Below, in pieces: positions 67 through 61,272 of a stretch of DNA of 64,000 bases. The stretch comes from Macrostomum lignano (Eukaryota), in the NCBI GenBank assembly GCA_002269645.1, contig NIVC01000010.1, positions 992,001 to 1,056,000 of the forward strand, given 5' to 3'. The notes below the pieces were generated by a model. That model was given only the letters and a program-made list of their open reading frames with translations. It made no database searches and was not told where the DNA came from. The translations under genes and the position numbers were made by a program. Within the stretch, counting starts at the first letter, position 1; every line of letters starts with the position of its first letter.

Positions 67-320
67 AGTGCAACCCCTGCCCCAGCACCCACCCCCTCCG
101 GAACCCCTGCCCCAGCACCCACCCCCTCCGCAACCCCTGCCCCAGCCCCCACCCCCTCCGCAACCCCTGCCCCAGCACCCACCCCCTCCGCAACCCCTGC
201 CCAGCACCCACCCCCTCCGGAACCCCTGCCCCAGCACCCACCCCTCCGCAACCCCTGCCCCAGCACCCACCCCCTCCGCAACCCCTGCCCCAGCACCCAC
301 CTCCTCCGCAACCCCTGCCG
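67..320 (+). repeat. 30-bp C-rich tandem repeat (GCAACCCCTGCCCCAGCACCCACCCCCTCC) encoding ATPAPAPTPS ahead of the Pol eta core
   Basis: About 8 copies read directly; two copies each lack one C (near 200 and 241). Confidence 0.9.
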
Positions 321-12394: not shown

Positions 12395-12680
12395 CCCATT
12401 GAATTGGGCCAGATGTGCAACCGACAGCTCAGCCGCAGCTATTGCGCGGCGCATCTGAAGGCTGCGTACGGCTGTTCAGTCCAAGGACTGGGGGGTCGCC
12501 ACACACAGCCTCAATTACCCCAGCTAATGCTGGCACCCATTTTACAGCTGGGCGAACTGTAGCAATGTAGAGTTATGTGTCTTGCTCAAGAACACAAATT
12601 GTTCCGAGTGGGATCGGGAATCGAACCCCCGACGTTCAAGTCGTGAGTCCGACGCTCTAGCCACTAAGCTAAAAACCCCT
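12395..12680 (-). mobile_element. tRNA-derived CORE-type SINE, copy 1
   Basis: Minus strand: A box TAGCTTAGTGG, B box GGTTCGATTCC, then a MIR-core-like segment; similar to the copies at 35.1, 53.0 and 61.0 kb. Confidence 0.85.
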
Positions 12681-21691: not shown

Positions 21692-24600
21692 ATGGCAAGC
21701 GACAGCAGCGGGATCAACATCTCCGGTCGCGACTGCACCAGCGATGCATTCAACGACAACGACTATTGCTTGACAACGGATGAGTACATTGGCGAGATTC
21801 TGGCCTACCTGAGGCCCACAGTCTATGAGATTGTGTTGCTATGCCTGTACTGCATTGTACTGCTAGCTGGCCTGCTTGGCAACGCCCTGGTGATAGCGGC
21901 TGTGCTGCGCAAGCAGACAATGCGGACAGCCACTAATATGTTTCTTGTGAACTTGGCGCTGGCCGACTTCCTGGTGATTCTGTTGTGCCTGGTGCCAACC
22001 GTCATTGAGGATGTGATGGAGAGCTGGTTGTTTGGAGACGCAGCCTGTCGGGTGCTTAAATACTTGCAGGTAACAAACTCCCTTTTTAAACAGAATGTCA
22101 ATTCAGAAACTGATGCAGACGCAAGGGGTGACGACTGAATGCTTGAGAGACCACACCAGCTGAAGGTCCAGAAGCTCCAACGTGACGAACGAAGTCAGAT
22201 CTGATGCAGACACGTGATGGGCGTTCTATGAAATTTTGAGGCTTTACAAGACCGCCCTGAGGCCGCAGTCGTATTGAATACACTGGCGCTTATGGGAAAA
22301 ATGTGACCTGGCAGAATTGTTGAATATCTCGACGATTCGGAGGGCTGGCGACTTGATTGGCTCGTGTTTGTGTGCCTGCATTGCTCCGTTGATCCGGCGC
22401 AGCAAAAACGTCAGGGAGGGGAGGGTTATTCCCCTCTGGTAGTTCTATTCTTAGAAGCCTCTCAGCTTCTAGAAAGTCCTTTTAGTACGGGGTTTTCTTT
22501 GGGAGCACGAGAATTTCTTGCAGTGAGGTTTTCCCGGATGGTTTCTTGCCAGTTGGAATTTCAAATCAAATCCAGTCTATAGACAATGCTGGACTAGATT
22601 AGAACTAGACTAGACTAGACATAAACTAGACTAGATTAGAACTAGACTAGACTAGACATAAACTAGACTAGACATAAACTAGACTAGATTAGAACTAGAC
22701 TAGACTAGACATAAACTAGACTAGACTAGTCATAAACTAGACTAGATTATAACTAGACTAGACTAGTCATAAACTAGACTAGACTAGTCATAAACTAGAC
22801 TAGACCAGACATAAACTAGACTAGATTAGAACTAGACTAGACATAAACTAGACTAGATTAGAACTAGACTAGACTAGACATAAACTAGACTAGATTAGAA
22901 CTAGACTAGACTAGACATAAACTAGACTAGATTAGAACTAGACTAGACTAGACATAAACTAGACTAGATTAGAACTAGACTAGACTAGACATAAACTAGA
23001 CTAGACTAGTCATAAACTAGACTAGATTATAACTAGACTAGATTAGAACTAGACTAGACTAGTCATAAACTAGACTAGACTAGTCATAAACTAGACTAGA
23101 CCAGACATAAACTAGACTAGATTAGAACTAGACTAGACATAAACTAGACTAGATTAGAACTAGACTAGACATAAACTAGACTAGATTAGAACTAGACTAG
23201 ACTAGACATAAACTAGACTAGATTAGAACTAGACTAGACTAGACATAAACTAGACTAGATTAGAACTAGACTAGACTAGACATAAACTAGACTAGATTAG
23301 AACTAGACAAGACTAGACATAAACTAGACTAGATTAGAACTAGACTAGACTAGACATAAACTAGACTAGATTAGAACTAGACTAGACTAGTCATAAACTA
23401 GACTAGATTAGAACTAGACAAGACTAGACATAAACTAGACTAGATTAGAACTAGACTAGACTAGACATAAACTAGACTAGATTAGAACTAGACTAGACTA
23501 GTCATAAACTAGACTAGATTAGAACTAGACAAGACTAGACATAAACTAGACTAGATTAGAACTAGACAAGACTAGACATAAACTAGACTAGATTTGACTT
23601 GAAATTCCGACTGAAAGAACCTTGCGGAAAAACCTGCGGGAAAGACCCTTTTCTTTTTGAGTTGAATCGGTTAAATGTAAGGAAAATTAGTCTATTAGAA
23701 ACTTCTGGCTCCGTCAACTGAGTTTTAAAGGTTCTGTTCAATGTAAAAAAGTGTTTATCTTCAAATTGCATTTCTGAAACTCAATTAAGGCAGCTCTATG
23801 AATTGTATGAACTCAAAAAAATCAATACCGTTTAAATTTAGAGATAATATCTACTCGCATGAGAGAGATTGCCGCAGACAGCGCACTCTCGGTACAACAG
23901 ACAGCTCATTCGATGACTTACGTTGACTTTCCTATCGTCAGTCAGACATGAGAATTAGCATGTCAGAATATGTCAGAAACAGACTCTCTTCCTAAAGCTA
24001 TACATAGTGCAGCATTAGCTTTCTATTTGTTCGGGCAGGTCCCAATGCAAGGACCACAAAAAAATAGAGCTGTTGCAAAAGGATCTTGTCAGTTTTAGAC
24101 TGAAACTTCATTTTTCACAGACATGTCCCTGTAATTATACAAACTGCAGCACGCATCAGATCTTTTTTATACTCAGCTCCGTACTGGAATGCATTTAGCT
24201 ATACTTTTGGCTTCCTGTGGAAAAATTTCTGCAGAAATTTCTTTTGCCTTCTTTCTCATACTGCAGCGGCAACTGGATCAAAATACTAGCAGTTTTACGG
24301 GCATATTTTTGATGAAGCCACTATTTAGGCCATGTCCCACATTTAGCGAGGAAAAAATTCTAGACCTTTTATAGTGTTAATCCGCAAGACTGGTTCGCTT
24401 TCTGCAACACCCACGGCTCTTGCTTGTAGCTATCTGAAGCGTAAATACAGAGACACAACCAGTCTACCCAGCTTTCAACCACAAAGCCATTGCAAATTGA
24501 AGGCCTGAAAATTTACTAATCTTCTCTGCGCTAATCCACCACTCACGGCGGGCGGTTCGTTTTGATGCCGCAAACTGCCGCGATTTAAGCGCTGGCAACG

Positions 24601-27600
24601 CAGTAGCGAGAAAGTTAATGTAATAAGATGACGCGATTATGGCTTCCTGTAAACAAATTAAATCGTTCGTTCCATCTCATGACCCATTCGCAGAGGACTT
24701 TTGAAAGGGTTTAGGGGACACAGCGGGAAGGCGCGGACGCAGCTGTGCTGTTCTCTGAAGAGGATTGAGTTGAGCCCTTGAGCGCATGTGCTGATGATTC
24801 GAATTTTCCGGTTTGCACGCTTCGGTAACTGATAATAAATGTGTGCAGCCCCGAAGGTCATTTAGTCCGGATCGCAAAAAAGTAAAATGCTGACAAAATA
24901 CTTGGCGGTTTCGTCACCTGAGTTGCAACAACTGCAGGGAAAATACACGTTCACGTTCGTACACCAGGATGTTATATTTCATATTTGTGCTTTATTGCAA
25001 CTGTTTTAGTAGTTGCATATGTAGGCAGCAGTTTTATTACTGGAGACCCCCCACGGGTCTCCCATTGTGCACGAGTTGTTTACGGCTTGTAAATTGCTGT
25101 TATTATAACTTTATTAAGCGCTCTATTTGATTATTATTGGTATAGGCCAAGTCAAGGCTCATATGTGGGTAATTGCTCAGATTTAAGGCTCATGGGGGAT
25201 TGCTGAAATGCTTCAATCCTATTATACAGAGACTAACAAAATTCGTAACTGTAAGTCTTGTGAGCTGTAAATATCGGTGCCAAAATCATAACATACTTTT
25301 TAGCTACCGTACACGCACTTAATGTAATTTTAGGTCAAGTTTTATTGTTACAAAATTTTAGTTCATGTAGACGGGAAATCCTAGCCCCTCCCGTTGGGAG
25401 CCAAAAAATGCAAATTTAAGTCTGAATTGACGCTACTGGTTTAGGTATGCTCTACGTTACAGAACGCATCGCGCTGAAAGAGGTTTTGCCTAAGATGAAT
25501 TAATTCGATTAAGAAAGTCTGACTTCTCAAAGCTGAAGTAAAGAATGGCGCAGAGAGGACCGCTAGCAAAAGAGGACAGTGGGAGGACAGTGATTGCAGG
25601 TGACTGACGGTTTGAAGTTTGACGTGATTTCAGTTAATAGTCTATGGTATTTCCACTGCGGCGAAAAAATGAGTGCCTGACTGCGGTGCCAAAATGAGTG
25701 CCTGCGGTGCCAAAATGAGTGCCTGCGGTGCCAAAATGAGTGCCTGACTGCAGTGCCAAAATGAGTGCCTGCGGTGCCAAAATGAGTGCCTGCGGTGCCA
25801 AAATGAGTGCCTGACTGCGGTGCCAAAATGAGTGCCTGCGGTGCCAAAATGAGTGCCTGACTGCGGTGCCAAAATGAGTGCCTGCGGTGCCAAAATGAGT
25901 GCCTGCGGTGCCAAAATGAGTGCCTGACTGCGGTGCCAAAATGAGTGCCTGCGGTGCCAAAATGAGTGCCTGCGGCGCCAAAATGAGTGCCTGCGGTGCC
26001 AAAATGAGTGCCTGCGGTGCCAAAATGAGTGCCTGCGGCGCCAAAATGAGTGCCTGCGGCGCCAAAATGAGTGCCTGCTCCCGGCGCCAAAATGAGTGCC
26101 TGCGGCGCCAAAATGAGTGCTTGACTGCGGAGCCAAAATGAATGCTTGACTGCGGCGCCAAAATGAATGCTTGACTGCGGCGCCAAAATGAATGCTTGAC
26201 TGCGGCGCCAAAATGAATGCTTGACTGCGGCGCCAAAATGAATGCCTGCAGTGCCAAAATGAGTGCCTGCGGTGCCAAAATGAGTGCCTGCGGTGCCAAA
26301 ATGAGTGCCTGCGGCGCCAAAATGAGTGCCTGCTCCCGGCGCCAAAATGAGTGCCTGCGGCGCCAAAATGAATGCTTGACTGCGGCGCCAAAATGAGTGC
26401 CTGCGGTGCCAAAATGAGTGCCTGACTGCGGTGCCAAAATGAGTGCCTGCGGTGCCAAAATGAGTGCCTGACTGCGGTGCCAAAATGAGTGCCTGCGGTG
26501 CCAAAATGAGTGCCTGCGGTGCCAAAATGAGTGCCTGACTGCGGTGCCAAAATGAGTGCCTGCGGTGCCAAAATGAGTGCCTGCGGCGCCAAAATGAGTG
26601 CCTGCGGTGCCAAAATGAGTGCCTGCGGTGCCAAAATGAGTGCCTGCGGCGCCAAAATGAGTGCCTGCGGCGCCAAAATGAGTGCCTGCTCCCGGCGCCA
26701 AAATGAGTGCCTGCGGCGCCAAAATGAATGCTTGACTGCGGAGCCAAAATGAATGCTTGACTGCGGCGCCAAAATGAATGCTTGACTGCGGCGCCAAAAT
26801 GAATGCTTGACTGCGGCGCCAAAATGAATGCTTGACTGCGGCGCCAAAATGAATGCCTGCAGTGCCAAAATGAGTGCCTGCGGTGCCAAAATGAGTGCCT
26901 GCGGTGCCAAAATGAGTGCCTGCGGCGCCAAAATGAGTGCCTGCTCCCGGCGCCAAAATGAGTGCCTGCGGCGCCAAAATGAATGCTTGACTGCGGCGCC
27001 AAAATGAGTGCCTGCGGCGCCAAAATGAGTGCCTGCAGTGCCAAAATGAGTGCCTGCAGTGCCAAAATGAGTGCCTGCAGTGCCAAAATGAGTGCCTGCA
27101 GTGCCAAAATGAGTGCCTGCAGTGCCAAAATGAGTGCCTGCAGTGCCAAAATGAGTGCCTGCGGCGCCAAAATGAGTGCCTGACTGCGGCGCCAAAATAA
27201 GTGCCTGACTGCAGTGCCAAAATGAGTGCCTGACTGCAGTGCCAAAATGAGTGCCTGCGGCGCCAAAATGAGTGCCTGACTGCGGCGCCAAAATGAGTGC
27301 CTGACTGCAGTGCCAAAATAAGTGCCTGACTGCAGTGCCAAAATGAGTGCCTGCGGCGCCAAAATGAGTGCCTGCGGCGCCAAAATGAGTGCCTGACTGC
27401 GGTGCCAAAATGCTTGACTGCGGCGCCAAAATGAGTGCCTGCGGTGCCAAACTGAGTGACTGACTGCGGTGCCAAAATGAGTGCCTGCGGTGCCAAAATG
27501 CTTGACTGCGGCGCCAAAATGAATGCTTGACTGCGGCGCCAAAATGAATGCTTGACTGCGGCGCCAAAATGAATGCTGCGACACCAAAATGAGTGCCTGC

Positions 27601-30600
27601 AGTGCCAAAATGAGTGCCTGCAGTGCCAAAATGAGTGCCTGCAGTGCCAAAATGAGTGCCTGCGGTGCCAAAATGAGTGCCTGCGGCGCCAAAATGAGTG
27701 CCTGCTCCCGGCGCCAAAATGAGTGCCTGCGGCGCCAAAATGAATGCTTGACTGCGGCGCCAAAATGAGTGCCTGCGGCGCCAAAATGAGTGCCTGCAGT
27801 GCCAAAATGAGTGCCTGCAGTGCCAAAATGAGTGCCTGCAGTGCCAAAATGAGTGCCTGCAGTGCCAAAATGAGTGCCTGCAGTGCCAAAATGAGTGCCT
27901 GCGGCGCCAAAATGAGTGCCTGACTGCGGCGCCAAAATGAGTGCCTGACTGCAGTGCCAAAATAAGTGCCTGACTGCAGTGCCAAAATGAGTGCCTGACT
28001 GCAGTGCCAAAATGAGTGCCTGCGGCGCCAAAATGAGTGCCTGCGGCGCCAAAATGAGTGCCTGACTGCGGTGCCAAAATGAGTGCCTGCGGTGCCAAAA
28101 TGCTTGACTGCGGCGCCAAAATGAGTGCCTGCGGTGCCAAACTGAGTGACTGACTGCGGTGCCAAAATGAGTGCCTGCGGTGCCAAAATGCTTGACTGCG
28201 GCGCCAAAATGAATGCTTGACTGCGGCGCCAAAATGAATGCTTGACTGCGGCGCCAAAATGAATGCTGCGACACCAAAATGAGTGCCTGCAGTGCCAAAA
28301 TGAGTGCCTGCAGTGCCAAAATGAGTGCCTGCAGTGCCAAAATGAGTGTCTGACTGCGGTGCCAAAATGAGTGCCTGTAGTGCCAAAATGAGTGCCTGAC
28401 TGCGGTGCCAAAATGAGTGCCTGTAGTGCCAAAATGAGTGCCTGACTGCGGTGCCAAAATGAGTGTCTGACTGCGGTGCCAAAATGAGTGCCTGTAGTGC
28501 CAAAATGAGTGCCTGCAGTGCTAAAATGAGTGCCTGCAGTGCCAAAATGAGTGCCTGCAGTGCCAAAATGAGTTCTAACAAAACCGATTCTCAAATTAAA
28601 GTACATGCAGGAATTTAGTCATGTAAATGTAGAAGTTTTTGCTTTTCCCCCCACCTTAAATTCCATTAAGATAATAAGATTAAAAACTCAATAACAACTG
28701 TGAAAACTTGCTTACAAAAACTTTACCGCCAACTTTGTTCAATTAACAATTATTTAGCACTTCTAGGATTTGAAATCTTCTCTTCCATAATCATGTCTTA
28801 GATCATTTCTCCTGGTTTACCGTCTCATTTTTGTGTAATTCCCTCACAACTCGCCATCTGCAGCCAGTGTCGGTCACCGTGTCCGTACTGACGATGACAC
28901 TGAACTCGGTTGAGCGCCTACTTGCAGTCTGCTTCCCGATGAAAGTGAAAACAACTAAAAAACGAGTAGGCAGCCTCATCATACTGGCCTGGACCACTGC
29001 TCTGGCATCGAAGCTGCACTACCCCTTCACTATGGAGGCGGTCCCGTTCCCCAATCTGCCGAACGACACCGCCTTGCTGACCTCTTGCCGCTCCAATTGG
29101 AAACAGCTGGACCAGAACGGCACCGTCATTATCAATTTTGAAATTGGCGCCAGCATTCTTGATTCCTTGCTGTTCTTTGTCCTGCCGTTCGCATGGATGC
29201 TGGTGGCCTACAGCATGGTGTGTCATCGCCTGTGGCATGCTTCTGTGCCTGGGGAGGCCTCGCGTGTTCAGCAGGGGCGCAGTGAGAAATTTTTGTGCTT
29301 TTCAGTATATTTTATTAAATGTCTTGGCGTGCCCCTGATGCTAAAACCCCTTGGTGCTGAAACCCCTGGTGCTAAAGACCCCTGGTACTAAAGCCCTTGG
29401 TGCTAAAGCCCCTGGTGCTAAAGACCCCTGGTGCTAAAGCCCCTGGTGCTTAAACCCCTGGCCCTGGTGCAAAAGACCCTGGTGCTAAAGCCCCTGGTGC
29501 TAAAGACCCTGGTGCTAAAGACCCTGGTGGTAAAGACCCTGGTGCTAAAGACCCCTGGTGCTAAAGACCCTGGTGCTAAAGACCCTGGTGCTAAAGACCC
29601 TGGTGCTAAAGACCCTGGTGCTAAAGACCCTGGTGCTAAAGACCCTGGTGCTAAAGACCCTGGTGCTAAAGACCCTGGTGCTAAAGACCCTGGTGCTAAA
29701 GACCCTGGTGCTAAAGACCCTGGTGCTAAAGACCCTGGTGCTAAAGACCCTGGTGCTAAAGACCCTGGTGCTAAATTAAGACCCTGGTGCTAAAGCCCCT
29801 GGTGCTAAAGCCCCTGGTGCTAAAACCCCTGGTGCTAAAGCCCCTGGTGCCAATTAAGACCCTGGTGCTAAAGCCCCTGGTGCTAAAGCCCCTGGTGCTA
29901 AAACCCCTGGTGCTAAAGACCCCTGGTACTAAAGCCCTTGGTGCTAAAGCCCCTGGTGCTGAAGACCCTGGTGCTAAAGACCCCTGGTGCTAAAGCCCCT
30001 GGTGCTAAAGACCCCTGGTACTAAAGCCCTTGGTGCTAAAGCCCCTGGTGCTGAAGACCCTGGTGCTAAAGACCCCTGGTGCTAAAGCCCCTGGTGCTAA
30101 AGCCCCTGGTGCTAAAGACCCTGGTGCTAAAGACCCTGGTGCTAAAGCCCCTGGTGCTAAAGACCCTGGTGCTAAAGACCCTGGTGCTAAAGCCCCTGGT
30201 GCTAAAGACCCTGGTGCTAAAGCCCCTGATGCTAAAGCCTGATGCATTTGGTTAATTTAAAAATCATCCCATACGAGCACCTGACGCACTTGCTGTACAC
30301 CAGACACACCCAGCCACCATCGTGCTGGCAGCAGCCGCATCTCCGGATCTGGCCGGAGGTCGACATCCAGCGCTTTGCCAGCTTCCGCGGCTGCCTCGGC
30401 AGCCTCTCCGGACTCGACCCTGGCTCAGCGGAGGCGCACCGCCCTGATGCTGGTGTCCATCGTGCTCATCTTCTTCGTGTGCAACCTGCCTGTGCACATT
30501 ATGCGAGTGGCGTGAGTGTCTTTCGGATCTGTTGTAGATTCGGCTGCCCATGTGCTCACATGGTAGGCATATCAACTCGAATGAGACTCATCTCTATATT

Positions 30601-34610: not shown

Positions 34611-35125
34611 TGCTAAGTCCCACTTGTTATTCAAGATTATCCTTTAGTGTAAAAACATGATGTAACAAGTGTTTCGATAGCTTGGTTGTCACTATATTTA
34701 ATATTTACTCGCAAAAGTCTTGCATATTCAAATGTGTTTGTCGATGCACACGGGCACACGTATTTACATGTAGGCGTGAGGTTTTATAAGACCAAAATTT
34801 CAGCTTTGACGAAACCTAAAAATTCGAAAAACTTCAACTCTACAAAGCATTACTTAATTCTTCGTCATATGATTTACATTCGATTTACATTTTCAACAAA
34901 ATTATTAGCTCGCACATTGGGTAACCTAAAACTGCAGTAAGTCTACAATGAAGCATGAATCTATATTTATTGCACAATTTTTAAGTGACCTGTTATTCAA
35001 TGTACTATAAATATAAAATCACAGCTGTTACACTGTATGTTGTTTAATATTTTACTAGCTAAACCTGTTGTTTCATACTTTACAACTACTACTAATAAAA
35101 ATTAATTACACCTGTCCCTTTAGAG

Positions 35126-35384
35126 GCAGCTATGTGCAACCGACAGCTCAGCCGCAGCTATTTGCGCGGCGCATCTGAAGGCTGCGTACGGCTGTCCAGT
35201 CCAAGGACTGGGGGGTCGCCACACAGCCTCAATTACCCCAGCTAATGCTGGCACCCATTTTACAGCTGGGCGAACTGAAGCAATGCAGAGTTGTCTTGCT
35301 CAAGGATACAATTCTTTCGATTTACGACTGGATCGAGAATCGAACTCACGAGTGTCAGTCGTGAATACGACTACAACCCTTAGT
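35126..35384 (-). mobile_element. CORE-type SINE, copy 2 (damaged tRNA head)
   Basis: Body nearly identical to the 12.4-kb copy. Confidence 0.82.
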
Positions 35385-50997: not shown

Positions 50998-53900
50998 ATG
51001 TCGTCGCCAGTGGAGTCAGCGAAGCGCGATCTGGCTCGTGCACTTCGCTCCGAGGAGCCTCATCGAGTCAAAGCGATACTTCGGTCGCCAGTTGCCGACC
51101 TGGCTTGGCTAGACAAGCCGCTAGACAGGTAACTGCGGTTAAATGTACATACGCACAATCGGTAGAAAACGTTGGGAGCACTGGATATACTGTACCAATA
51201 CGTCCAATATTTATAAGCTGCAGTACGCACCTCTAACTTTCAGTTCGTTGCAGCTTGAAAGGGGCTGCAGCATTTTCTGGCAGCATGCAGCTTGAAAACC
51301 TGCAGGGTTAAGACCATAGACTATAGCTTCTACTGCTCAAAGCAAAATCTGACTGATGTGGTTGCTATGCTATAATGTCTGTGGCCCCAAGGGGCACCAA
51401 GGGGCACCAAGGGGCCCCAAGGGGCTTTAGCACCAAGGGGCTTTAGCACCAAGGGGCTTTAGCACCAAGGGGCTTTAGCACCAAGGGGCTTTAGCACCAA
51501 GGGGCTTTAGCACCAAGGGGCTTTAGCACCAAGGGGCGCCAGCACCAAGGGGCGCCAGCACCAAGGGGCGCCAGCAACAAGGGGCGCCAGCACCAAGGGG
51601 CGCCAGCACCAAGGGGCTTAGCACCAAGGGGCTTTAGCACCAAGGGGCTTTAGCACCAAGGGGCTTTAGCACCAAGGGGCTTTAGCACCAAGGGGCTTTA
51701 GCACCAAGGGGCTTTAGCACCAAGGGGCTTTAGCACCAAGGGGCTTTAGCACCAAGGGGCGCCAGCACCAAGGGGCGCCAGCACCAAGGGGCTTTAGCAC
51801 CAAGGGGCGCCAGCACCAAGGGGCGCCAGCACCAAGGGGCGCCAGCACCAAGGGGCGCCAGCACCAAGGGGCGCCAGCACCAAGGGGCGCCAGCACCAAG
51901 GGGCGCCAGCACCAAGGGGCGCCAGCACCAAGGGGCGCCAGCACCAAGGGGCGCCAGCACCAAGGGGCGCCAGCACCAAGGGGCGCCAGCACCAAGGGGC
52001 GCCAGCACCAAGGGGCGCCAGCACCAAGGGGCGCCAGCACCAAGGGGCGCCAGCACCAAGGGGCGCCAGCCGCTTTATTTAGTTTAACCCCTTCTTACTA
52101 AAATAGCTTGGTTCTCTTAGTTCGGAATGTACGACTAAACGGATGCATATTGCAATTTAACGTTTTCACAACAGAGACGGCAGCTGCGCTCTGCACATCG
52201 GCTCCTATTGCGGCCAGGAGGTTGGCGTTCACGCCTTGCTAGAATTCGGCTGCGACCCGAACGTCACCAATCAGAACGGAGAGACTCCGCTGCACGTGGC
52301 AGCCGAGCAGCGGTTCGAGCACATGATCGACCTGCTGGTCGATGCCGAGGGAATCCGGCTTGATGCGGCTCGAAAGCTGGACAGGCGGACTGCGCTGCAC
52401 ATTGCCGCCAGTCACGGCTGTTGCGACGGCGTGCGAAGACTTCTGGAAGCCGGAGCTGGCATCGATGTTCGGGATCGGGACGGCAACACACCGGTGTTCC
52501 TGGCTGTCCAGAACAACAAGTGAGGATTTAGTTTACCTGATGGGTAGCCACGCTTTGTACTTTAAGTAGAAGGACGCACCAAAACAAGACACATCTTGAC
52601 AACAATTTCCCGCAGACACCGCGTAGTTCACGAGCTGGTCTCTCAGGGCGCTAATTTGAAGCTGAAGAACAACGGCTTGCAGACTTGCTTGGCATTTGCC
52701 ATGAAGCAGAGCCAGGATAAAGCCATGATCAAACTGCTTGTTGAGCGCAAGTCCACCATGGCTCCTCAGCCTGGCACTAGCAGGCAGGCAGCCGTTCGAG
52801 CTACCCGAATTGACAATGCTGCACAGAAGCAACAGTCGATGGCAGGTAGAGATCTGCCTAATCAGGGTAGATTTTTTATGACCGAGTCGCATAGTAACAA
52901 ACTTGACCGGCCGAATCTCACACCCAGCAGACAGCTATGGCAGCAGCACCCTCAGGTATGGCAGTTTCCAACCGATTGTATAAATCGGTTCTGTAGGTTT
53001 CGATGAGCTTAATTTATTCATTAGCTAAAGGGGGTTGTAGTAGCCCAGTGGTTTGAGCGTCGCCTGCGTCGGAGTCCCGACTTGAAAGGTCGGGGGTTCG
53101 ATTCTCGACCCACTCGGAACAATTTGTGTCCTTGTGTCCTGAGCAAGACACTCAACTCTGCATTGCTTCAGTTTACCCAGCTGTAAAATGGGTGCCAGCA
53201 TTAGCTGGGGCAATTGAGGGTGTGTGTGGCGACCCCCCCCCCACCCCCAGTCCTTGGACTGAACGCTCAATATCTGGGGCTGAGCTGTCGGTTGCACATC
53301 TGCCCATTATTAATATTATTATGACTATCAAATCTCATACCCGCAGACTCGACATCAACAATCGGTCATTCCGGAAGAGCCAACAAAGCATCCTCAAGCA
53401 GCCCAGCACCCTCAGTACCACCAGCAGAAGCAGCAACAGCAGCAACAACAGCAGCACAGGCTTAGCAACGCAAATTACTCGCGCCAACGCGACACGAAAA
53501 GCGCCGGTGTTCAAGCAACCCCGGCCGAATCAGACCAAGAAGATGATGACGAAGAGGATGCATACAGCATGGACAGCAAAATCCGCGGCTTGTGCATCAT
53601 CGTGAACAATCAGGATTACTTCAACTCCGACGATTTCAAAGAACGCGCCGGAACAGATCTGGACGAGAGGCGCTTGGAGCGACTATTTAAATCGTTGCGC
53701 TTTCACGTCAAGATATTCAAGAATCTGGACGCCAAGGATATCTACTGGAACCTCAGCAACTATGCCAAGAGCGATCACAGCGGGTATGACTGTTACGTCT
53801 GCTGCATCCTGTCTCACGGCACTCTCGGTGGGATCTACGGAGTTGATGGACGAGTGCAGAAACTGTCCGACCTCACCGTGATGCTCAGCAGCACCAATTG

Positions 53901-54916
53901 TCCGTCGTTGGCTGGCAAGCCAAAACTGTTCTTTATCCAGGTGAGTTTCACAGCTGTACGGGTCTCGGCAATCCTCTACTTTCGCACGTTTAATTATTTT
54001 TCGAAAAATAACGACTTCCTTAGTTACCGCGAGTAAATATTTGAACTCGCGCGAGTGTAGAACGTGGCAGTGTATCGATTTTATGTCTATGTATACTAGT
54101 TTGAGGTGGCTATTGGCTATGTCTATGGCCAAAACCTGCAATCGCTCTCTGTTCAGGTTTTGGCCATAGACAATCGCTCCCTGTTTATTTGAAAAGGGAC
54201 TGAGGCAAGAGAGGGATGGGCCGTATTCTGAGAGATCTCTTGTCTTACTTGCTTTCTTGTCAATCTTGAGCAACAATGGGCCCATGCTAAGGCCCGGTTC
54301 AGGGCTATGCATGGCACATCTAAGGCCCTGTTCGACACCCACGTAGATGAGTTTCTGTGGCGCCGTTGCCACCCGCGCAACACCTTCGGCAACATACTTT
54401 TCTGGGTGGCGCACTACTACGATGTTTAATGCAACCGAACGTGATGTAACAAACTCGCTCATACCTGAGATGAGTCTCAAAGTCTTGAAGTTGACCGCCT
54501 GAACTTCGAAACCCATGCATCTTTAGGCTTGTCGAGGCCGCTGTCTCCAGCGAGGCGCGCACCATTTCACCGGCGATCGCGACCCGGCCATGATCCCGAT
54601 GGCCAACCACGAGACGGACGCGCTGTCAGCCGGCCCAGACCAAGAGTACATCCTGCCTGATCACGGCGACTTCTTGATTGGCTACGCCACGGTGGCTCAG
54701 CACATCGCCCAGCGGCACCGGGAGCAGGGCTCCGTGTACGTGCAGACCCTCTGCGACGTTATCGAACGCGGCAGGCACAAGGAGGACCTGCTCAGTCTGC
54801 TCACCAAAGTCAAATACCGCGTGTCGAAGCACGTGTTCCACAATGAAGACGGCAGCGTGTTCGTTCAGATGCCCGAAGTAAAGGAAACTCTGCGCAAGAA
54901 GATCTACTTTAAGTAG
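50998..54916 (+). CDS. Ankyrin-repeat caspase, 599 aa; exons 50998-51128, 52175-52519, 52616-52955, 53347-53940, 54527-54916
   Basis: Ankyrin motifs GSCALHIG, GETPLHVAA, RTALHIAA, GNTPVFLA. PolyQ/acidic linker. Caspase RGLCIIVNN, RAGTDLD, CCILSHG, GKPKLFFIQ|ACRG, DFLIGYATV, GSVYVQTLC. 1800 nt in frame. Confidence 0.88.
51385..52070. repeat. 16-bp minisatellite (AGCACCAAGGGGCTTT / AGCACCAAGGGGCGCC), caspase intron 1
   Basis: Direct periodicity; reverse complement resembles the 29.3-30.2 kb unit. Confidence 0.93.
53026..53320 (+). mobile_element. CORE-type SINE, copy 3, in caspase intron 3 (internal 3' deletion)
   Basis: A box TAGCCCAGTGG, B box GGTTCGATTCT, shared core. Confidence 0.82.
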
Positions 54917-55504: not shown

Positions 55505-55672
55505 TTCCTGACCCCATCAGCGACATCTGCATCAATGAGCCTGACAGTCTTCCTGACCCCATCAGTGACATCTGCATCAATGAGCCTGACAGTCTTCCTG
55601 ACCCCATCAGCGACATCTGCATCAATGAGCCTGACAGTCTTCCTGACCCCATCAGTGACATCTGCATCAATG
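55505..55672. repeat. 45-bp tandem repeat, about 3.7 copies
   Basis: CCTGACCCCATCAGYGACATCTGCATCAATGAGCCTGACAGTCTT. Confidence 0.88.
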
Positions 55673-55687
55673 AGATTGTGTCTCCCT

Positions 55688-56780
55688 CAAACACAAACTC
55701 TCTCTCTTAAACACAGACTCTCTCTCTTAAACACAGACTCTCTCTCTTAAACACAGACTCTCTCTCTCAAACACAGACTCTCTCTCTTAAACACAGACTC
55801 TCTCTCTTAAACACAGACTCTCTCTCTTAAACACAGACTCTCTCTCTTAAACACAGACTCTCTCTCTCAAACACAAACTCTCTCTCTTAAACACAGACTC
55901 TCTCTCTCAAACACAAACTCTCTCTCTTAAACACAGACTCTCTCTCTTAAACACAGACTCTCTCTCTCTTAAACACAGACTCTCTCTCTTAAACACAGAC
56001 TCTCTCTCTTAAACACAGACTCTCTCTCTCTTAAACACAGACTCTCTCTCTTAAACACAGACTCTCTCTCTTAAACACAGACTCTCTCTCTCTCTTAAAC
56101 ACAGACTCTCTCTCTTAAACACAGACTCTCTCTCTCTTAAACACAGACTCTCTCTCTCAAACACAAACTCTCTCTCTTAAACACAGACTCTCTCTCTTAA
56201 ACACAGACTCTCTCTCTTAAACACAGACTCTCTCTCTTAAACACAGACTCTCCCTCTTAAACACAGACTCTCTCTCTCTCTTAAACACAGACTCTCTCTC
56301 TTAAACACAGACTCTCTCTCTTAAACACAGACTCTCTCTCTTAAACACAAACTCTCTCTCTTAAACACAGACTCTCTCTCTTAAACACAGACTCTCTCTC
56401 TTAAACACAGACTCTCTCTCTTAAACACAGACTCTCTCTCTCTTAAACACAGACTCTCTCTCTTAAACACAGACTCTCTCTCTCTCTTAAACACAGACTC
56501 TCTCTCTTAAACACAGACTCTCTCTCTCTCTTAAACACAGACTCTCTTAAACACAGACTCTCTCTCTCTCTTAAACACAGACTCTCTCTCTTAAACACAG
56601 ACTCTCTCTCTCTCTTAAACACAGACTCTCTCTCTTAAACACAAACTCTCTCTCTGAAACACAAACTCTCTCTCTTAAACACAGACTCTCTCTCTTAAAC
56701 ACAGACTCTCTCTCTCTTAAACACAGACTCTCTCTCTCTTAAACACAAACTCTCTCTCTTAAACACAGACTCTCTCTTCA
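55688..56780. repeat. ~20-bp variable minisatellite AAACACAGA(CT)nT
   Basis: Direct periodicity with variable CT number. Confidence 0.93.
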
Positions 56781-57512: not shown

Positions 57513-58884
57513 GATTGCGTTGCTAGAAATTTAGTCAGCAAGTTTTCTACAAAACTGACAAATCTGGGGCTGAATAAAAATCTCCCTGGCTGACGATGTC
57601 TTTTATAGACGATGGTCGGGATTTTCACCAGCCAATCAGAAATTGTCAATGATTTCATCAACGCTTGAAACGTTCAAGGATTCTAAGAGAGTTCTAAGTA
57701 AAAATTGAGAGAAATTTGCTCCAGAAACGAAAAGAATCAGAGAAAGCTCTAGAAAATTCCAGGATATCTTATGAGATTGTGAAATTTTGTTTGAAAGCTC
57801 TCAATAAACCATCAGATTGTTTTATAGTCCTGAGGAATATGCTTAGACTTATATTTAGACATTGTAAGAAGTCTCTAGGTCACATTTGGGGGGAGGTGTT
57901 TCACAGATGTTACAATTAGTGACCAGTGATTAGTGACAAACAACAATTTAAAAGGTTACAAGTGCTACAGTTTCCTTTCGCAGAATGATTTGTAAATCTA
58001 GCGACAAGGTACAAGCTCTCAAAATAGTGACTCAAAATATGTATATGGCCAAATCAACCACTGAGCTCCTGGCTCTGGAAAACTTCAGAGAATGAGCTGA
58101 GACACGGCTTCAGTGTTCAGCGGTCACTGTACCAGTGGAATTCATGGTTCCAAGCTTCAACGTAGCTATACATAGATCAATCCAATATATTTATAATCGT
58201 TTTTACCGAATCTTTTCTTCAATCTTCACGTCGATATCCTAGTCTTCTAGGTCAGAAATAGCCGCAAGTCTGCACAAAAACACCTGTAACCAACTGCTTG
58301 ATTCGTATTCCGTAGGCAACCGAGCATATAACGAGGCCCTAGGCATATAACAAAACACCTGCAAAAACCCTCCTTTACCAGCATCAATTTTTATCCAGAG
58401 AGAGTAGTTACCGTGGGCGTCAATTTTCTGCAATTTTCTGTCCCTTTCTTTACTTCCGCAGTGTCGGGATTTGGGTGTGACAACCATTTTTTCACCTACG
58501 CCGCCTCACAATAATGGCCACCCACGGCTCACAGCTTTTGGACGCTGAAATCAGTTGAAACGGCCTTTCTAAATCCTTAATTTCGTATGACAAGCACAAC
58601 ATTAGACTGTAAAAACTAGCACACAAGCTTACCAGAAGCTCGCTGCGACTTAATTTTATAACCGAACTTTTATTACTCTGTCTTATACTGAATCTCAGCA
58701 ATTTGCTGTCATATTGGACTTGCGGTATCTTATCTACTGTATCATGACTGCAGCTCATATCAATACCGAACCAGCTGTGGGCACAAATGCTCGTACATAC
58801 GAGCTTATAAGTACTCGAGATTTGGTACAGCCCCAGGCATGTCTCTACATTCTGCAACCTGTCTCGCCGTTTGAAAAAGAAAAA

Positions 58885-60801
58885 ATGGTGAATTTCTGCA
58901 ACGCATTTCCGTTGCTTATAGCGCTGAGCTGGCATTTTCTTTCCAGTGCTCTGGGTCAGAAGCTTATCGTGGAAACGGATGACGCAATCTACCGCGGTCG
59001 GGTGCTGTCTCTAAACAACCAACAGCTTCAACAGCAAACTGTTGCCTTCCTGGGCATTCCATACGCTCAGCCGCCGATCAATGAGCTTCGATTCGCAGCC
59101 CCGTTGCCATGGAGACCGACAATTCCCGAAGGAAACTCATCGTTCAAAGCCGAGCTAAACGCCACCAGAGCGGGACCGGCCTGCCTGCAGCGATCAGACC
59201 AGAGTGGCACCCCTGGCCGCATGTCTGAGGACTGCCTGTACCTGAATGTGCACTCGCCTCCTGGAGTTCAAGGACGTCCCAAACCGGTGCTGGTCTGGCT
59301 GCACGGCGGGTTCTTTGAAACCGGTTCAGTCAGCGACCCGGACCAGACTGGCACCTGCTTCGGTTGGGATCTGGTAGCAACGCGCCAGAGCATGCTGCTA
59401 GTTGAGGCCGCCTACCGTCTAGGAGTGTTTGGCTTCCTAGCCGAGCCGGAGCCCGCCAACGGCAATGCCGGCCTGAAGGACCAGCAGATGGCGCTGGCCT
59501 GGGTTGCTAAGAACATCGTCCACTTTGGCGGTAACAATCGCTCAGTGACTCTGGCAGGCCTTGACGCTGGAGCTGCAGCCGTCGGATTTCACATGCTGAG
59601 TCCCGGCAGCAGGGACCTCTTTCAGAGAGTCGTCTTCCTCGGGGGCAGCCCCCTTGCAGGCTGGGCTTTCGTGCGAGATCTTCAAGCGCTGCGTACAGCA
59701 CACGAAGCCTTCTACAATCTGACAGGCTGCACAGACCATGATGAGCTGCTTAGTTGCTTGCGCACTCTTCCAGCGGACGAATTGAACTCTCACCAATCAA
59801 AGTTTAATCAGGTATTTGATCGGGTCGAGTTTCCAGTGATTGTTGATGGCCAGTTTCTACAGTCAGATCCTGTCGAGGCTTTTGAGCGGGGCAATTTCGA
59901 GTCAAAAGCAGTCATCATTGGCGTGACCAGTTTGGAAGGAATTCAGCTAGCCTACAGAGCCCTCGGGGCGTTCAACGTCACGAACCAGTGGAATTTGACC
60001 GGCCAAGTTCACTTGGATTTGCTTGCTGAAGCCTTTCGCTACGTACCTCGTTTTCCAGAGGAGCCAGCGCCTCTGGCAAGCGAGTTTCTGCAGCTGACAT
60101 TGACATCCTATCCGGGCGAAAACTTGGGCGCTCGAAATTTCCGGCTGCTGACGAGCGCTCTATCGGAGCAGGCGGTGGTGTGCGACTCAAACCGGATGGC
60201 CGACCTTCTGCTCCAAGCTGCCAACGGGAGTTCGGACACATTTTTCTACCAGCTCGACGAGCCTGATAGCAACACAGATGAGTACCTGGGCGCCGGGCAT
60301 GGCAAAGACGCCGCCTACTTCACCGGCGAACCACTGCGACGAGCTGACTATGATGCAGAGCAGAAAGGATTGTCTAATTCAATGATGGCCATGCTGACAA
60401 CATTTCTAGACAGTGGGAACGTCACCGTGACTGGCTGGAAGCCGACCAGTCAACAGGGACTGGAGTTTTACAGATTCAGAGCGTCAAGGAGCGCCGATTA
60501 CCGCTCGGAGATGGTCAGTGGCGGATTCAAGCGACAGGACTGCCGTCTGTGGTCTGAAGTCATGCCTCGGCTGAGTGTTGCAACGCCGACTACTTCAGCT
60601 GAACCGGACGTTGACACCGAGGCTAAGTTCTGGGAGCGCTGCAACACAACGATAAACTTGGTGAGCGTCATTGTCATGGGCGTCGGCGGAGGCTTGATCC
60701 TGCTTTTGATCGTCTGCGTTGTCATTGTGGCCAGAGATCGTTACAGTAGTTCGCACGATTTCATTGAGCTTCATCAGCGTGTCAAACCATTGGGAAAATA
60801 G
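58885..60801 (+). CDS. Cholinesterase-like type I membrane protein, probably non-catalytic (neuroligin/gliotactin-like), 638 aa, intronless
   Basis: Signal peptide; FLGIPYAQPP..LRF, SEDCLYLNV, WLHGGF, GNAGLKDQ..AL.WV..NI..FGG; nucleophile elbow reads GLDAG (no Ser); C-terminal TM helix and short tail. Confidence 0.88.
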   Translation: MVNFCNAFPLLIALSWHFLSSALGQKLIVETDDAIYRGRVLSLNNQQLQQQTVAFLGIPYAQPPINELRFAAPLPWRPTIPEGNSSFKAELNATRAGPACLQRSDQSGTPGRMSEDCLYLNVHSPPGVQGRPKPVLVWLHGGFFETGSVSDPDQTGTCFGWDLVATRQSMLLVEAAYRLGVFGFLAEPEPANGNAGLKDQQMALAWVAKNIVHFGGNNRSVTLAGLDAGAAAVGFHMLSPGSRDLFQRVVFLGGSPLAGWAFVRDLQALRTAHEAFYNLTGCTDHDELLSCLRTLPADELNSHQSKFNQVFDRVEFPVIVDGQFLQSDPVEAFERGNFESKAVIIGVTSLEGIQLAYRALGAFNVTNQWNLTGQVHLDLLAEAFRYVPRFPEEPAPLASEFLQLTLTSYPGENLGARNFRLLTSALSEQAVVCDSNRMADLLLQAANGSSDTFFYQLDEPDSNTDEYLGAGHGKDAAYFTGEPLRRADYDAEQKGLSNSMMAMLTTFLDSGNVTVTGWKPTSQQGLEFYRFRASRSADYRSEMVSGGFKRQDCRLWSEVMPRLSVATPTTSAEPDVDTEAKFWERCNTTINLVSVIVMGVGGGLILLLIVCVVIVARDRYSSSHDFIELHQRVKPLGK

Positions 60802-60967: not shown

Positions 60968-61272
60968 ATGCTGCAGCCTAGTGGTCAGAGCGTCGTACTC
61001 ACGACCTAAAAAGGTCGAGGGTTCGATTCCCGATCCCACTAGGAACAATTTGTGTCCTTGAGCAAGACACTCAACTCTGCATTGCTTCAGTTCACCCAGC
61101 TGTAAAATGGGTGCCAGCATTAGCTGGGGTAAATTGAGGGTGTGTGTGGCGACCCCCCAGTCCTTGGACTGAACAGCCGTACGCAGCCTTCAGATGCGCC
61201 GCGCAATAGCTGCGGCTGAGCTGATGGATGCACATCTGTCCATTGGGCCAGGTGTAATCAATTATTATTATT
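60968..61272 (+). mobile_element. CORE-type SINE, copy 4 (most complete, ends in ATT repeats)
   Basis: A box, B box GGTTCGATTCC at 61020, core 61051-61111. Confidence 0.85.

What the first reader, a model, noticed from the sequence alone, without database searches (positions are those of the whole stretch)
50998..54916. Caspase with an ankyrin-repeat prodomain instead of CARD or DED
Seen: five exons join in frame, linking about five ankyrin repeats, a polyQ/acidic linker and a complete caspase (SHG, QACRG split by an intron, S1 arginines present). The linker has HETD-A, and the small subunit has DFLIGYATV. Known: initiator caspases normally use death-fold prodomains, and caspase-8 self-cleaves at VETD. 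Inference: a caspase-8-like initiator recruited by an ankyrin-binding ligand, implying a non-canonical activation platform.
Basis: partly seen in the sequence, partly recalled or inferred. Interest (0 to 1): 0.78.

Follow-up and report, generated by a model that had tools for sequence, protein, structure and literature searches.

The report
Flatworm caspase with ankyrin-repeat prodomain
This is a real gene of the free-living flatworm Macrostomum lignano for a caspase-8-like protease with ankyrin repeats in place of death-fold domains; this type is already described in parasitic flatworms but was reported to be absent from free-living ones.

Summary
Five GT-AG exons (50998-54916, + strand) join into an 1800-nt reading frame. 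Its 599-aa product is 100% identical to GenBank PAA94436.1 (Macrostomum lignano Mlig019067.g1), a model derived from RNA-seq. The protein has an N-terminal helical cap plus five ankyrin repeats, a disordered Q-rich/acidic linker of about 130 aa, and a complete caspase domain. That domain is closest to human caspase-8 and keeps R372, H429, Q470, C472 and R533.

"ANK caspases" are a published flatworm clade (Lee et al. 2014, as cited by Horkan et al.; Horkan et al. 2024), sister to DED caspases, and the same "unknown ankyrin-dependent activator" idea has already been proposed.

What is new is modest. Horkan et al. say ANK caspases are restricted to parasitic flatworms. This gene is an orthologue in a free-living, early-branching flatworm:
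- NJ bootstrap support of 74-86% for grouping with the parasite clade.
- Two shared derived residues.
- One intron shared in position and phase inside ankyrin repeat 4.

The fusion therefore probably predates parasitism. The mechanism (prodomain-mediated proximity activation, self-cleavage at HETD501|A) remains inference.

The parts
50998..51128 (+). Exon 1: start codon and N-terminal capping helices (aa 1-43, plus 2 nt of codon 44)
   Evidence: splice model; helices 4-18, 21-29; identical to PAA94436.1
51129..52174 (+). Intron 1 (phase 2). Contains a 16-nt minisatellite at 51417-52070. Not shared with the parasite orthologues.
52175..52519 (+). Exon 2: ankyrin repeats 1-3 and the first helix of repeat 4 (aa 44-159)
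52520..52615 (+). Intron 2 (96 nt, phase 2, splits codon K159 in ANK repeat 4). Same alignment column and phase as intron 2 of the Trichobilharzia szidati and Taenia solium ANK-caspase genes.
52616..52955 (+). Exon 3: rest of ANK repeat 4, ANK repeat 5 (ANK domain ends about aa 206 = 52757), then the first 66 aa of the disordered linker
52956..53346 (+). Intron 3 (phase 0), the only junction between the ANK side and the caspase side. Mostly a SINE-like dispersed repeat. Read-through would hit a stop after 17 codons.
53347..53940 (+). Exon 4: Q-rich and acidic linker (DEED343 at 53548-53559), then the large-subunit part of the caspase up to Q470. R372 lies here; H429 is at 53815-53817.
53941..54526 (+). 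Intron 4 (586 nt, phase 0), between Q470 and A471 of QACRG. Absent from the parasite orthologues, which instead have an intron at FQ|NR.
54527..54916 (+). Exon 5: ACRG (C472 at 54530-54532), disordered intersubunit loop with HETD501 (54608-54619), small subunit (DFLIGYATV, R533, Q532, V540, PEV motif), stop TAG at 54914-54916

Best explanation
The locus is a real, expressed five-exon gene of the free-living flatworm Macrostomum lignano (Mlig019067.g1, GenBank PAA94436.1). It encodes a 599-aa 'ANK caspase' made of an N-terminal cap plus five ankyrin repeats, a disordered Q-rich/acidic linker of about 130 aa, and a catalytically complete caspase-8-like protease domain. It is the orthologue of the ANK caspases already described in parasitic flatworms (Neodermata). 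The ANK-caspase fusion therefore most likely arose before parasitism, at or before the last common ancestor of Rhabditophora.

Likely mechanism (inferred, not shown). It is a long-prodomain, initiator-type zymogen. The ankyrin domain binds a still unknown partner or scaffold and raises the local concentration of the protease domain, which dimerises. It then cleaves itself after Asp in the disordered intersubunit loop. HETD501|A is the candidate site conserved in all three genomic copies. It may also shed the prodomain at DEED343|A. Downstream it would process short-prodomain executioner caspases, filling the role of the DED-caspase/FADD axis that flatworms are reported to lack.
For: Shown:
- In-frame GT-AG model identical to the deposited protein. 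The GenBank annotation of this assembly derives from RNA-seq/transcriptome assemblies (PMC5730564).
- The deposited proteins of the two other full-length copies equal a g1-type transcript.
- pN/pS among the copies is 0.17-0.26.
- Pfam finds ANK plus C14. AlphaFold2 gives confident ANK and caspase folds with disordered linkers.
- The caspase domain is closest to caspase-8. R372, H429, Q470, C472 and R533 are conserved.

Orthology:
- An exhaustive profile search of 1.84 billion representatives puts this protein with trematode, cestode and monogenean ANK caspases, ahead of all DED caspases. The profile included this protein, so its own rank is partly by construction.
- NJ bootstrap for M. lignano plus the neodermatan clade is 86% and 74% in two gap-trimming runs without the groundwater sequence. 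It is 82% for the clade that also includes that sequence, under both distance measures.
- Gln before the second S1 Arg, and Val in the C-terminal PEV motif, are shared with all or nearly all neodermatan members. 47 of 48 DED caspases have F/Y/L/W and 42 of 48 have Pro at those columns.
- Intron 2 is in the same column and phase in M. lignano, T. szidati and T. solium.

Context from the literature: flatworms lack detectable FADD, neodermatans lack DED caspases, and ANK caspases are sister to DED caspases.
Against: - The ankyrin regions are only generically similar: 45.6 bits against a neodermatan prodomain HMM, no better than unrelated ANK proteins.
- The other introns are not shared.
- As a single sequence the caspase domain scores about equally against vertebrate caspase-8 and the parasite ANK caspases. 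It also scores higher against a 48-sequence DED HMM than against the 7-sequence neodermatan HMM, though the two HMMs differ in depth.
- The trees are NJ only; no ML or Bayesian tree was possible.
- ANK+caspase fusions also exist outside flatworms: a jellyfish model and an annelid. Convergence is therefore possible in principle.
- Triclads are reported to lack the gene.
- No biochemical or genetic evidence exists for activation mode, cleavage sites, substrates or the binding partner. I did not see RNA reads directly.
Confidence: 0.62

Rival explanations
1. Convergent fusion. Macrostomum joined ankyrin repeats to a caspase-8-like domain independently of the parasitic flatworms, so the gene is an analogue and not an orthologue of the neodermatan ANK caspases.
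For: ANK-region similarity is only generic. The caspase-domain introns differ. ANK+caspase also occurs in a jellyfish model that does not group with flatworms and in an annelid. Triclads are reported to lack ANK caspases. The pairwise score to caspase-8 is about equal to the score to parasite ANK caspases.
Against: The intron shared in position and phase lies in the same (fourth) ankyrin repeat. Both have five repeats plus a cap, the repeats align in the same order and an acidic Y-x-M-x-S motif precedes p20. Two derived residues are shared. NJ bootstrap is 74-86%. Horkan et al. also recover an M. lignano caspase as sister to the ANK clade.
Confidence: 0.12
2. The ankyrin domain is not a recruitment module for proximity activation. 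Instead it acts in cis or on substrates. It could be an autoinhibitory or anchoring prodomain that holds the zymogen inactive or tethered until it is removed at DEED343. Alternatively it could be an exosite that selects substrates, for example in immune or NF-kB-type signalling rather than apoptosis.
For: Designed ankyrin-repeat proteins bind and inhibit caspases (cited). An acidic DEED|A site sits 10 residues before the protease domain. A fish CARD-ANK protein, Caiap, regulates an inflammatory caspase (PMC5662874, title and abstract only). The residues at the positions of caspase-8 Y412 and W420 are altered, which suggests specificity different from caspase-8.
Against: No direct evidence. The 130-aa disordered linker and caspase-8-like domain fit the usual initiator layout. 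The AlphaFold2 output gave no information on ANK-protease contacts.
Confidence: 0.2
3. Annotation artefact. Two adjacent genes (an ankyrin protein and a short-prodomain caspase) have been fused by the reader and by the public gene model.
For: Only one intron (52956-53346) links the ANK side to the caspase side. M. lignano uses trans-splicing and polycistronic precursors. I could not inspect reads.
Against: The model comes from RNA-seq assemblies that were cut at trans-splice and poly(A) evidence. The frame is kept across all four introns. The same structure occurs at three loci under purifying selection. The same architecture occurs in trematodes, cestodes and a monogenean. No start codon is in a plausible place for a caspase-only product, since M347 is an invariant internal residue.
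Confidence: 0.03

Closest known systems
Platyhelminth ANK caspases (Schistosoma 'subfamily C14A unassigned peptidase', Taenia solium 'Caspase-8'; Lee et al. 2014 as cited in, and Horkan et al. 2024, PMC11463336)
   Same: N-terminal cap plus five ankyrin repeats, a long low-complexity linker, and an acidic Y-x-M-x-S motif before p20. QACRG and SHG are present. Gln precedes the second S1 Arg and the C-terminus carries the PEV motif. One intron is shared in ANK repeat 4. The caspase domain is 40-44% identical.
   Different: The host is free-living and early-branching, whereas the clade was reported as parasite-specific. The protein is shorter (599 aa against 700-825). The intersubunit loop is much shorter. 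There is an intron inside QACRG instead of at FQ|NR. The ANK repeats are closer to the consensus.
Caspase-8 / DED caspases (peptidase C14A initiators)
   Same: Best structural-sequence match (E 3.8e-51). Long prodomain, a disordered intersubunit loop with Asp sites, and the same catalytic and S1 residues. [quoted passage not shown]
   Different: No DED domains. FADD is reported absent from flatworms. Y412 is replaced by Q, W420 by V, and the P-x-P C-terminal motif by PEV.
Other non-death-fold caspase prodomains (annelid Alitta virens ANK caspase; jellyfish Sanderia malayensis ANK+caspase model P0145; annelid TIR, Z-binding and ROC caspases)
   Same: The caspase domain is fused to a different protein-interaction module.
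   Different: The jellyfish units do not group with the flatworm clade (0% bootstrap). They have DACRE/NACRE active-site motifs. These look like separate fusions.
Caiap (CARD plus ankyrin-repeat protein of fish and invertebrates) and designed ankyrin-repeat caspase binders
   Same: Ankyrin repeats act as a caspase-regulating interaction surface (title and abstract only).
   Different: In those cases ANK and caspase are separate polypeptides. No homology beyond the repeat type was tested.

Membership tests
Caspases (MEROPS C14A / Pfam PF00656) | Caspase fold with p20 and p10 regions, above the curated Pfam threshold | tested here: met
   PF00656 at 185 bits against a cutoff of 21.4, covering model positions 1-233 of 233. 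AlphaFold2 pLDDT about 90 over aa 340-599.
Caspases (MEROPS C14A / Pfam PF00656) | Catalytic His-Cys dyad and the S1 pocket residues Arg/Gln/Arg | tested here: met
   H429, C472, R372, Q470 and R533 align to caspase-8 H317, C360, R260, Q358 and R413 (caspase-8 numbering from my own knowledge).
Caspases (MEROPS C14A / Pfam PF00656) | Cleavage after aspartate | not testable with these tools
   Needs a recombinant enzyme assay.
Platyhelminth ANK caspases | Ankyrin-repeat prodomain N-terminal to the caspase domain in one polypeptide | tested here: met
   same domain order as P0005, P0009, P0019 and P0125.
Platyhelminth ANK caspases | Caspase domain falls in the ANK-caspase clade, separate from DED and CARD caspases | tested here: met
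   NJ bootstrap 74-86% (82% for the clade that includes a groundwater sequence). Shared Q532 and PEV residues. NJ only, so support is moderate.
Platyhelminth ANK caspases | Common gene structure | tested here: inconclusive
   One of four M. lignano introns (ANK repeat 4, phase 2) coincides exactly with a neodermatan intron. The other three do not.
Platyhelminth ANK caspases | Restriction to parasitic flatworms (as stated by Horkan et al. 2024; a claim about distribution, not a structural feature) | tested here: not met
   The host is Macrostomum lignano, free-living, Macrostomorpha. This contradicts the published distribution rather than the membership.
Caspase-8 / DED caspases | Tandem death effector domains in the prodomain | tested here: not met
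   No PF01335 hit. Only ANK families are found in aa 1-340.
Caspase-8 / DED caspases | Recruitment by FADD | not testable with these tools
   FADD is reported as undetected in all flatworms. I could not search the M. lignano genome myself.
Executioner caspases (3/6/7 type) | Short prodomain; caspase domain closest to caspases 3/7 | tested here: not met
   The prodomain plus linker is about 340 aa. The caspase-8 match is about 40 bits better than caspases 3/7.

The most novel reading that the evidence does not exclude
The ANK caspase is not an adaptation to parasitism. It is an ancestral rhabditophoran initiator caspase, present before Neodermata arose and later lost (or missed) in triclads. 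M. lignano supports transgenesis and is a laboratory model. It would then be the first tractable free-living system in which to find the ankyrin-dependent activation platform that stands in for FADD/DED signalling in flatworms, including the parasites of medical importance.
Probability: 0.6. Interest if true: 0.45.

Novelty: new member of a known kind. Interest (0 to 1): 0.33.

Why it matters
The architecture itself is already in the literature and in public annotation, so it is not a discovery. The useful point is evolutionary and practical.

The only systematic survey (Horkan et al. 2024) ties ANK caspases to parasitism and reports none in free-living flatworms. This locus shows an orthologue, in three to four genomic copies, in Macrostomum. 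[quoted passage not shown]

It also gives a laboratory model in which the unknown activator of this caspase type could be sought. Such an activator is of interest as a parasite-specific cell-death target.

Tried and rejected
- **ANK prodomain HMM.** I tested whether the M. lignano ANK domain is specifically related to an HMM of neodermatan ANK prodomains. It scored only 45.6 bits, no better than unrelated ANK proteins, so ANK sequence cannot decide orthology.
- **Subfamily HMM scores.** Comparing scores against neodermatan, DED and CARD HMMs is uninformative in absolute terms because the HMMs differ in depth. Only the relative ranking is usable: M. lignano is the best non-member hit to the neodermatan HMM by 58 bits.
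- **Groundwater contig L006.** I searched upstream of the P0308 caspase ORF for an ANK exon. The contig is too short, and shows only what looks like an intron end.
- **The 'protein kinase-like prodomain' caspase.** I looked for the M. lignano caspase of that description reported by Horkan et al. It did not appear among the hits. This protein has no Pfam kinase hit and no PROSITE-type kinase signature, with patterns written from memory. The paper's supplement is not held, so whether that sequence is a paralogue or a different model remains unknown.
- **Schistosoma rodhaini locus.** The lookup failed. I used T. szidati, T. solium and S. mansoni instead.
- **Lingula caspase-8 introns.** I tried to learn which caspase-domain introns are ancestral from the Lingula caspase-8 gene. 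The automatic junction resolver failed at one junction and I did not pursue it.
- **Exon 5 in copies g2 and g3.** My first mapping was wrong because of a real 15-nt indel. It was corrected.
- **Intron-3 repeat.** Rfam found nothing on it. The ARAGORN tRNA calls at 22.8-23.6 kb are false positives inside a satellite.
- **Literature search.** No paper mentions Mlig019067.
- **Antisense ORF.** The ORF at 53683-54516 has no family hit and is treated as spurious.
Full report
**What is at the coordinates.** The window is genomic DNA of the flatworm Macrostomum lignano: contig NIVC01000010.1 of assembly GCA_002269645.1, about positions 992001-1056000. Between 50998 and 54916 on the + strand, five exons with GT..AG borders join in frame to 1800 nt, giving 599 codons plus TAG. 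The exons are 50998-51128, 52175-52519, 52616-52955, 53347-53940 and 54527-54916. The product is 100% identical over its full length to GenBank PAA94436.1, 'hypothetical protein BOX15_Mlig019067g1', which UniRef auto-names 'Caspase-8'.

**Domain anatomy.**
- Pfam finds ankyrin families within aa 50-165 (Ank_2, E 5.7e-25) and a full-length Peptidase_C14 match at aa 352-597 (E 1.9e-54). There is no DED, CARD or kinase hit.
- AlphaFold2 on a 14-sequence alignment gives six helix pairs in aa 4-206, that is a cap plus five ankyrin repeats (pLDDT about 80-89).
- Residues 207-339 are predicted disordered (pLDDT below 50). This stretch is Q-rich (28 Q in 136 residues, with a Q8 run) and is followed by the acidic ESDQEDDDEED at aa 333-343, the start of which lies inside it.
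- The caspase fold spans aa 340-599 (pLDDT about 90). Its intersubunit loop, aa 481-509, is disordered.
- Aligned to human caspase-8, the best PDB match (E 3.8e-51, against about 1e-38 for caspases 3, 7 and 9), all catalytic and S1 residues are present: R372, H429 (SHG), Q470 and C472 (QACRG), and R533.
- Intron 4 lies exactly between Q470 and A471.

**One transcript or two.** I could not see reads, but four lines of evidence argue for one transcript.
- The GenBank annotation of this assembly was made from a genome-guided RNA-seq/transcriptome assembly. It was cut at experimentally supported trans-splice and poly(A) sites and then translated with TransDecoder (PMC5730564).
- Exons 3 and 4 each encode part of a folded domain together with part of the linker. 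Only intron 3 separates the two halves, and reading through it meets a stop after 17 codons.
- The same five-exon structure is present at two other loci, L007 and L008. Introns there are 88-97% identical and exons 97.6-100% identical. pN/pS among the three copies is 0.17-0.26, though the counts are small.
- Those two loci carry a 15-nt in-frame insertion in exon 5 that their deposited 599-aa proteins omit. Their models were evidently projected from a transcript of the type encoded in this window. That is indirect evidence that this copy is the transcribed one.

**Is the architecture new? No.** Horkan et al. 2024 (Genome Biol Evol, PMC11463336) describe 'ANK caspases' as a monophyletic platyhelminth clade, sister to DED caspases. 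They say it was first noted in Schistosoma by Lee et al. 2014. They propose that an unidentified ankyrin-dependent activator replaces the missing FADD/DED system. My searches agree. ANK+C14 proteins occur in the following taxa:
- Schistosoma rodhaini, S. mansoni and S. japonicum
- Trichobilharzia
- Taenia solium
- the monogenean Cichlidogyrus

The clade also holds caspase-only or partial models from Heterobilharzia, S. turkestanicum, Mesocestoides, Sparganum and Rodentolepis, for which no ANK prodomain is recorded.

**What is new.** The same paper states that ANK caspases are restricted to parasitic flatworms. It says free-living flatworms lack them and keep a DED caspase. [quoted passage not shown] The gene in this window is an ANK caspase in that free-living species. 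M. lignano belongs to Macrostomorpha, which from published flatworm phylogenomics (my own knowledge) is the sister group of all other Rhabditophora. I tested whether the gene is orthologous to the parasite genes or a convergent fusion.
1. **Exhaustive profile search.** A search of 1.84 billion representative proteins with a caspase-domain profile of flatworm ANK caspases ranks the M. lignano protein inside the block of trematode, cestode and monogenean sequences (scores 363-540 bits). The only exception in that block is P0128, an Anabrus simplex (insect) tandem-caspase protein at 403 bits. Below the block come other insect tandem caspases and the DED caspases, at 325 bits and lower. The profile included the M. 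lignano sequence, so its own rank is partly by construction.
2. **Distance trees.** I built neighbour-joining trees of 85-86 caspase domains reduced to below 60% identity. The neodermatan clade gets 100% bootstrap. Neodermatans plus M. lignano get 86% and 74% in two gap-trimming runs without the groundwater sequence. The clade that also includes that sequence gets 82% under two distance measures.
3. **Shared derived residues.** Two columns link M. lignano to the parasite proteins. Gln precedes the second S1 Arg (Q532) in M. lignano and all seven neodermatans, where 47 of 48 DED caspases have F/Y/L/W and CARD caspases have W. Val sits in the C-terminal PEV motif in M. lignano and six of seven neodermatans, where 42 of 48 DED caspases have Pro.
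4. **Gene structure.** I resolved the exon structure of the T. solium and T. szidati genes exactly and mapped all introns onto a protein alignment. Intron 2 of the M. lignano gene splits codon K159 in phase 2 within ankyrin repeat 4. It falls in the same alignment column and phase as intron 2 of both parasite genes. The other introns are not shared: M. lignano has Q|ACRG, and the parasites have FQ|NR near the start of p20.
5. **Collinear layout.** Cap, five repeats, a C-terminal repeat with a K/AM-x-x-LL motif, a low-complexity linker, and an acidic stretch followed by Y-x-M-x-S just before p20.

Against orthology:
- The ankyrin sequences are only generically similar.
- As a single sequence, the caspase domain scores about the same against vertebrate caspase-8 and the parasite proteins.
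- I could only run distance trees.
- ANK+caspase fusions also exist elsewhere. The jellyfish Sanderia malayensis has a model with two tandem ANK+caspase units, which do not group with the flatworm clade. An annelid case is reported.

On balance I put orthology at about 0.85. The fusion then predates parasitism, and triclads would have lost it.

**How it most likely works.** What is shown is a catalytically complete caspase-8-like domain behind a long prodomain, with disordered connecting segments that contain Asp sites. The rest is inferred from how long-prodomain caspases work in general (established knowledge of caspase-8/-9 proximity-induced dimerisation). The ankyrin domain would bind an oligomeric partner, the protease domains would dimerise, and the intersubunit loop would be cut.
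- HETD501|A is the best candidate site. It lies in the disordered loop, aligns near the second caspase-8 processing site, and is conserved in all three genomic copies.
- FTGD487 is destroyed by the 15-nt insertion in the other two copies.
- D|A sites recur in the loops of relatives, although they are not strictly alignable: SVSD|A in schistosomes, SVED|A in Taenia, and YCAD|A in the groundwater sequence.
- DEED343|A, ten residues before the protease domain, is a plausible site for prodomain removal.
- Q532 and V540 replace caspase-8 Y412 and W420. From textbook structural knowledge these residues line the S2/S4 subsites, so an IETD-type preference should not be assumed.

Rivals: the ankyrin domain could be an autoinhibitory or anchoring module or a substrate-selecting exosite (0.2); the fusion could be convergent (0.12); the model could be an annotation artefact (0.03).

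**Limits.**
- I could not search the M. lignano genome for DED caspases or FADD.
- I could not identify the 'kinase-like' M. lignano caspase of Horkan et al.; the supplement is not held. This protein has no Pfam kinase hit or PROSITE-type kinase signature.
- I could not run ML phylogenies or see RNA reads.
- The word-indexed homologue search is lossy.

**Verdict.** This is a real and correctly read gene. Its kind is already known, so it counts as a new member of that kind. It carries a modest but concrete correction to the published distribution: ANK caspases are not parasite-specific.

Noticed in passing
window 51417-52070 (intron 1): A 16-nt minisatellite (CCAAGGGGCGCCAGCA and a GCTTTAGCA variant), about 41 copies. 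Intron 1 length differs among the three gene copies (1046, 1013 and 2824 nt).
   Followed up: partly
window 53030-53306 (intron 3); also 60990-61158 (+), 12405-12655 (-), 35125-35311 (-): A SINE-like dispersed repeat with a tRNA-like T-arm (GGTTCGATTC) fills most of intron 3. The copies are about 88% identical. There is no Rfam or ARAGORN tRNA call.
   Followed up: partly
L007 5410-5814 and L008 7218-7622 (exon 5 of paralogous copies g2 and g3): Both copies carry a 15-nt in-frame insertion in the intersubunit loop (HHFTG-GRQAS-DRDP). The deposited 599-aa proteins PAA70133.1 and PAA88208.1 omit it. Their GenBank models appear to be projected from a transcript of the window's copy, and the true products would be 604 aa.
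   Followed up: yes
window 22592-23594: A 37-nt GACTA-rich satellite (about 27 copies). ARAGORN calls four 'tRNA-Pyl(cta)' and one 'tRNA-Ile(tat)' inside it. Rfam finds no tRNA, so these are false positives.
   Followed up: yes
window 25681-28573: A 21-nt minisatellite, about 129 copies (2.9 kb). It leaves all three minus-strand frames open (spurious ORFs of 964-990 aa with no family hits).
   Followed up: yes
window 58714-60801 (+): A single long ORF encoding a carboxylesterase-family protein (PF00135, E 2.6e-99). It is the next annotated gene downstream of the caspase.
   Followed up: no
window 68-907 (+) and 4735-5583 (-): ORFs with an impB/mucB/samB (Y-family DNA polymerase) domain and a CtIP/SAE2 C-terminal motif. 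They are probably exons of two DNA-repair genes at the left end of the window.
   Followed up: no
L006 403-1272 (ENA groundwater metagenome ERZ978523, contig k127_1394908): A 289-aa intronless caspase ORF (P0308) that groups with the M. lignano protein (68% NJ bootstrap). It shares the PEV motif and has His at the position of Q532. It is likely from an unsampled free-living micro-invertebrate. The contig is too short to show any prodomain.
   Followed up: partly
protein P0145 (EukProt, Sanderia malayensis): A jellyfish gene model with two tandem units of ankyrin repeats plus a caspase domain (active sites DACRE and NACRE). The units do not cluster with the flatworm clade, which suggests an independent ANK-caspase fusion in Cnidaria, or two fused neighbouring genes.
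   Followed up: partly
window 55505-55674 and 55681-56000: Two tandem arrays (45-nt unit x3.8; 20-nt unit x16) lie about 600 nt downstream of the stop codon.
   Followed up: no
window 53683-54516 (-): A 277-aa antisense ORF overlaps exon 4 and intron 4 of the caspase gene. It has no family hit and is treated as spurious.
   Followed up: partly
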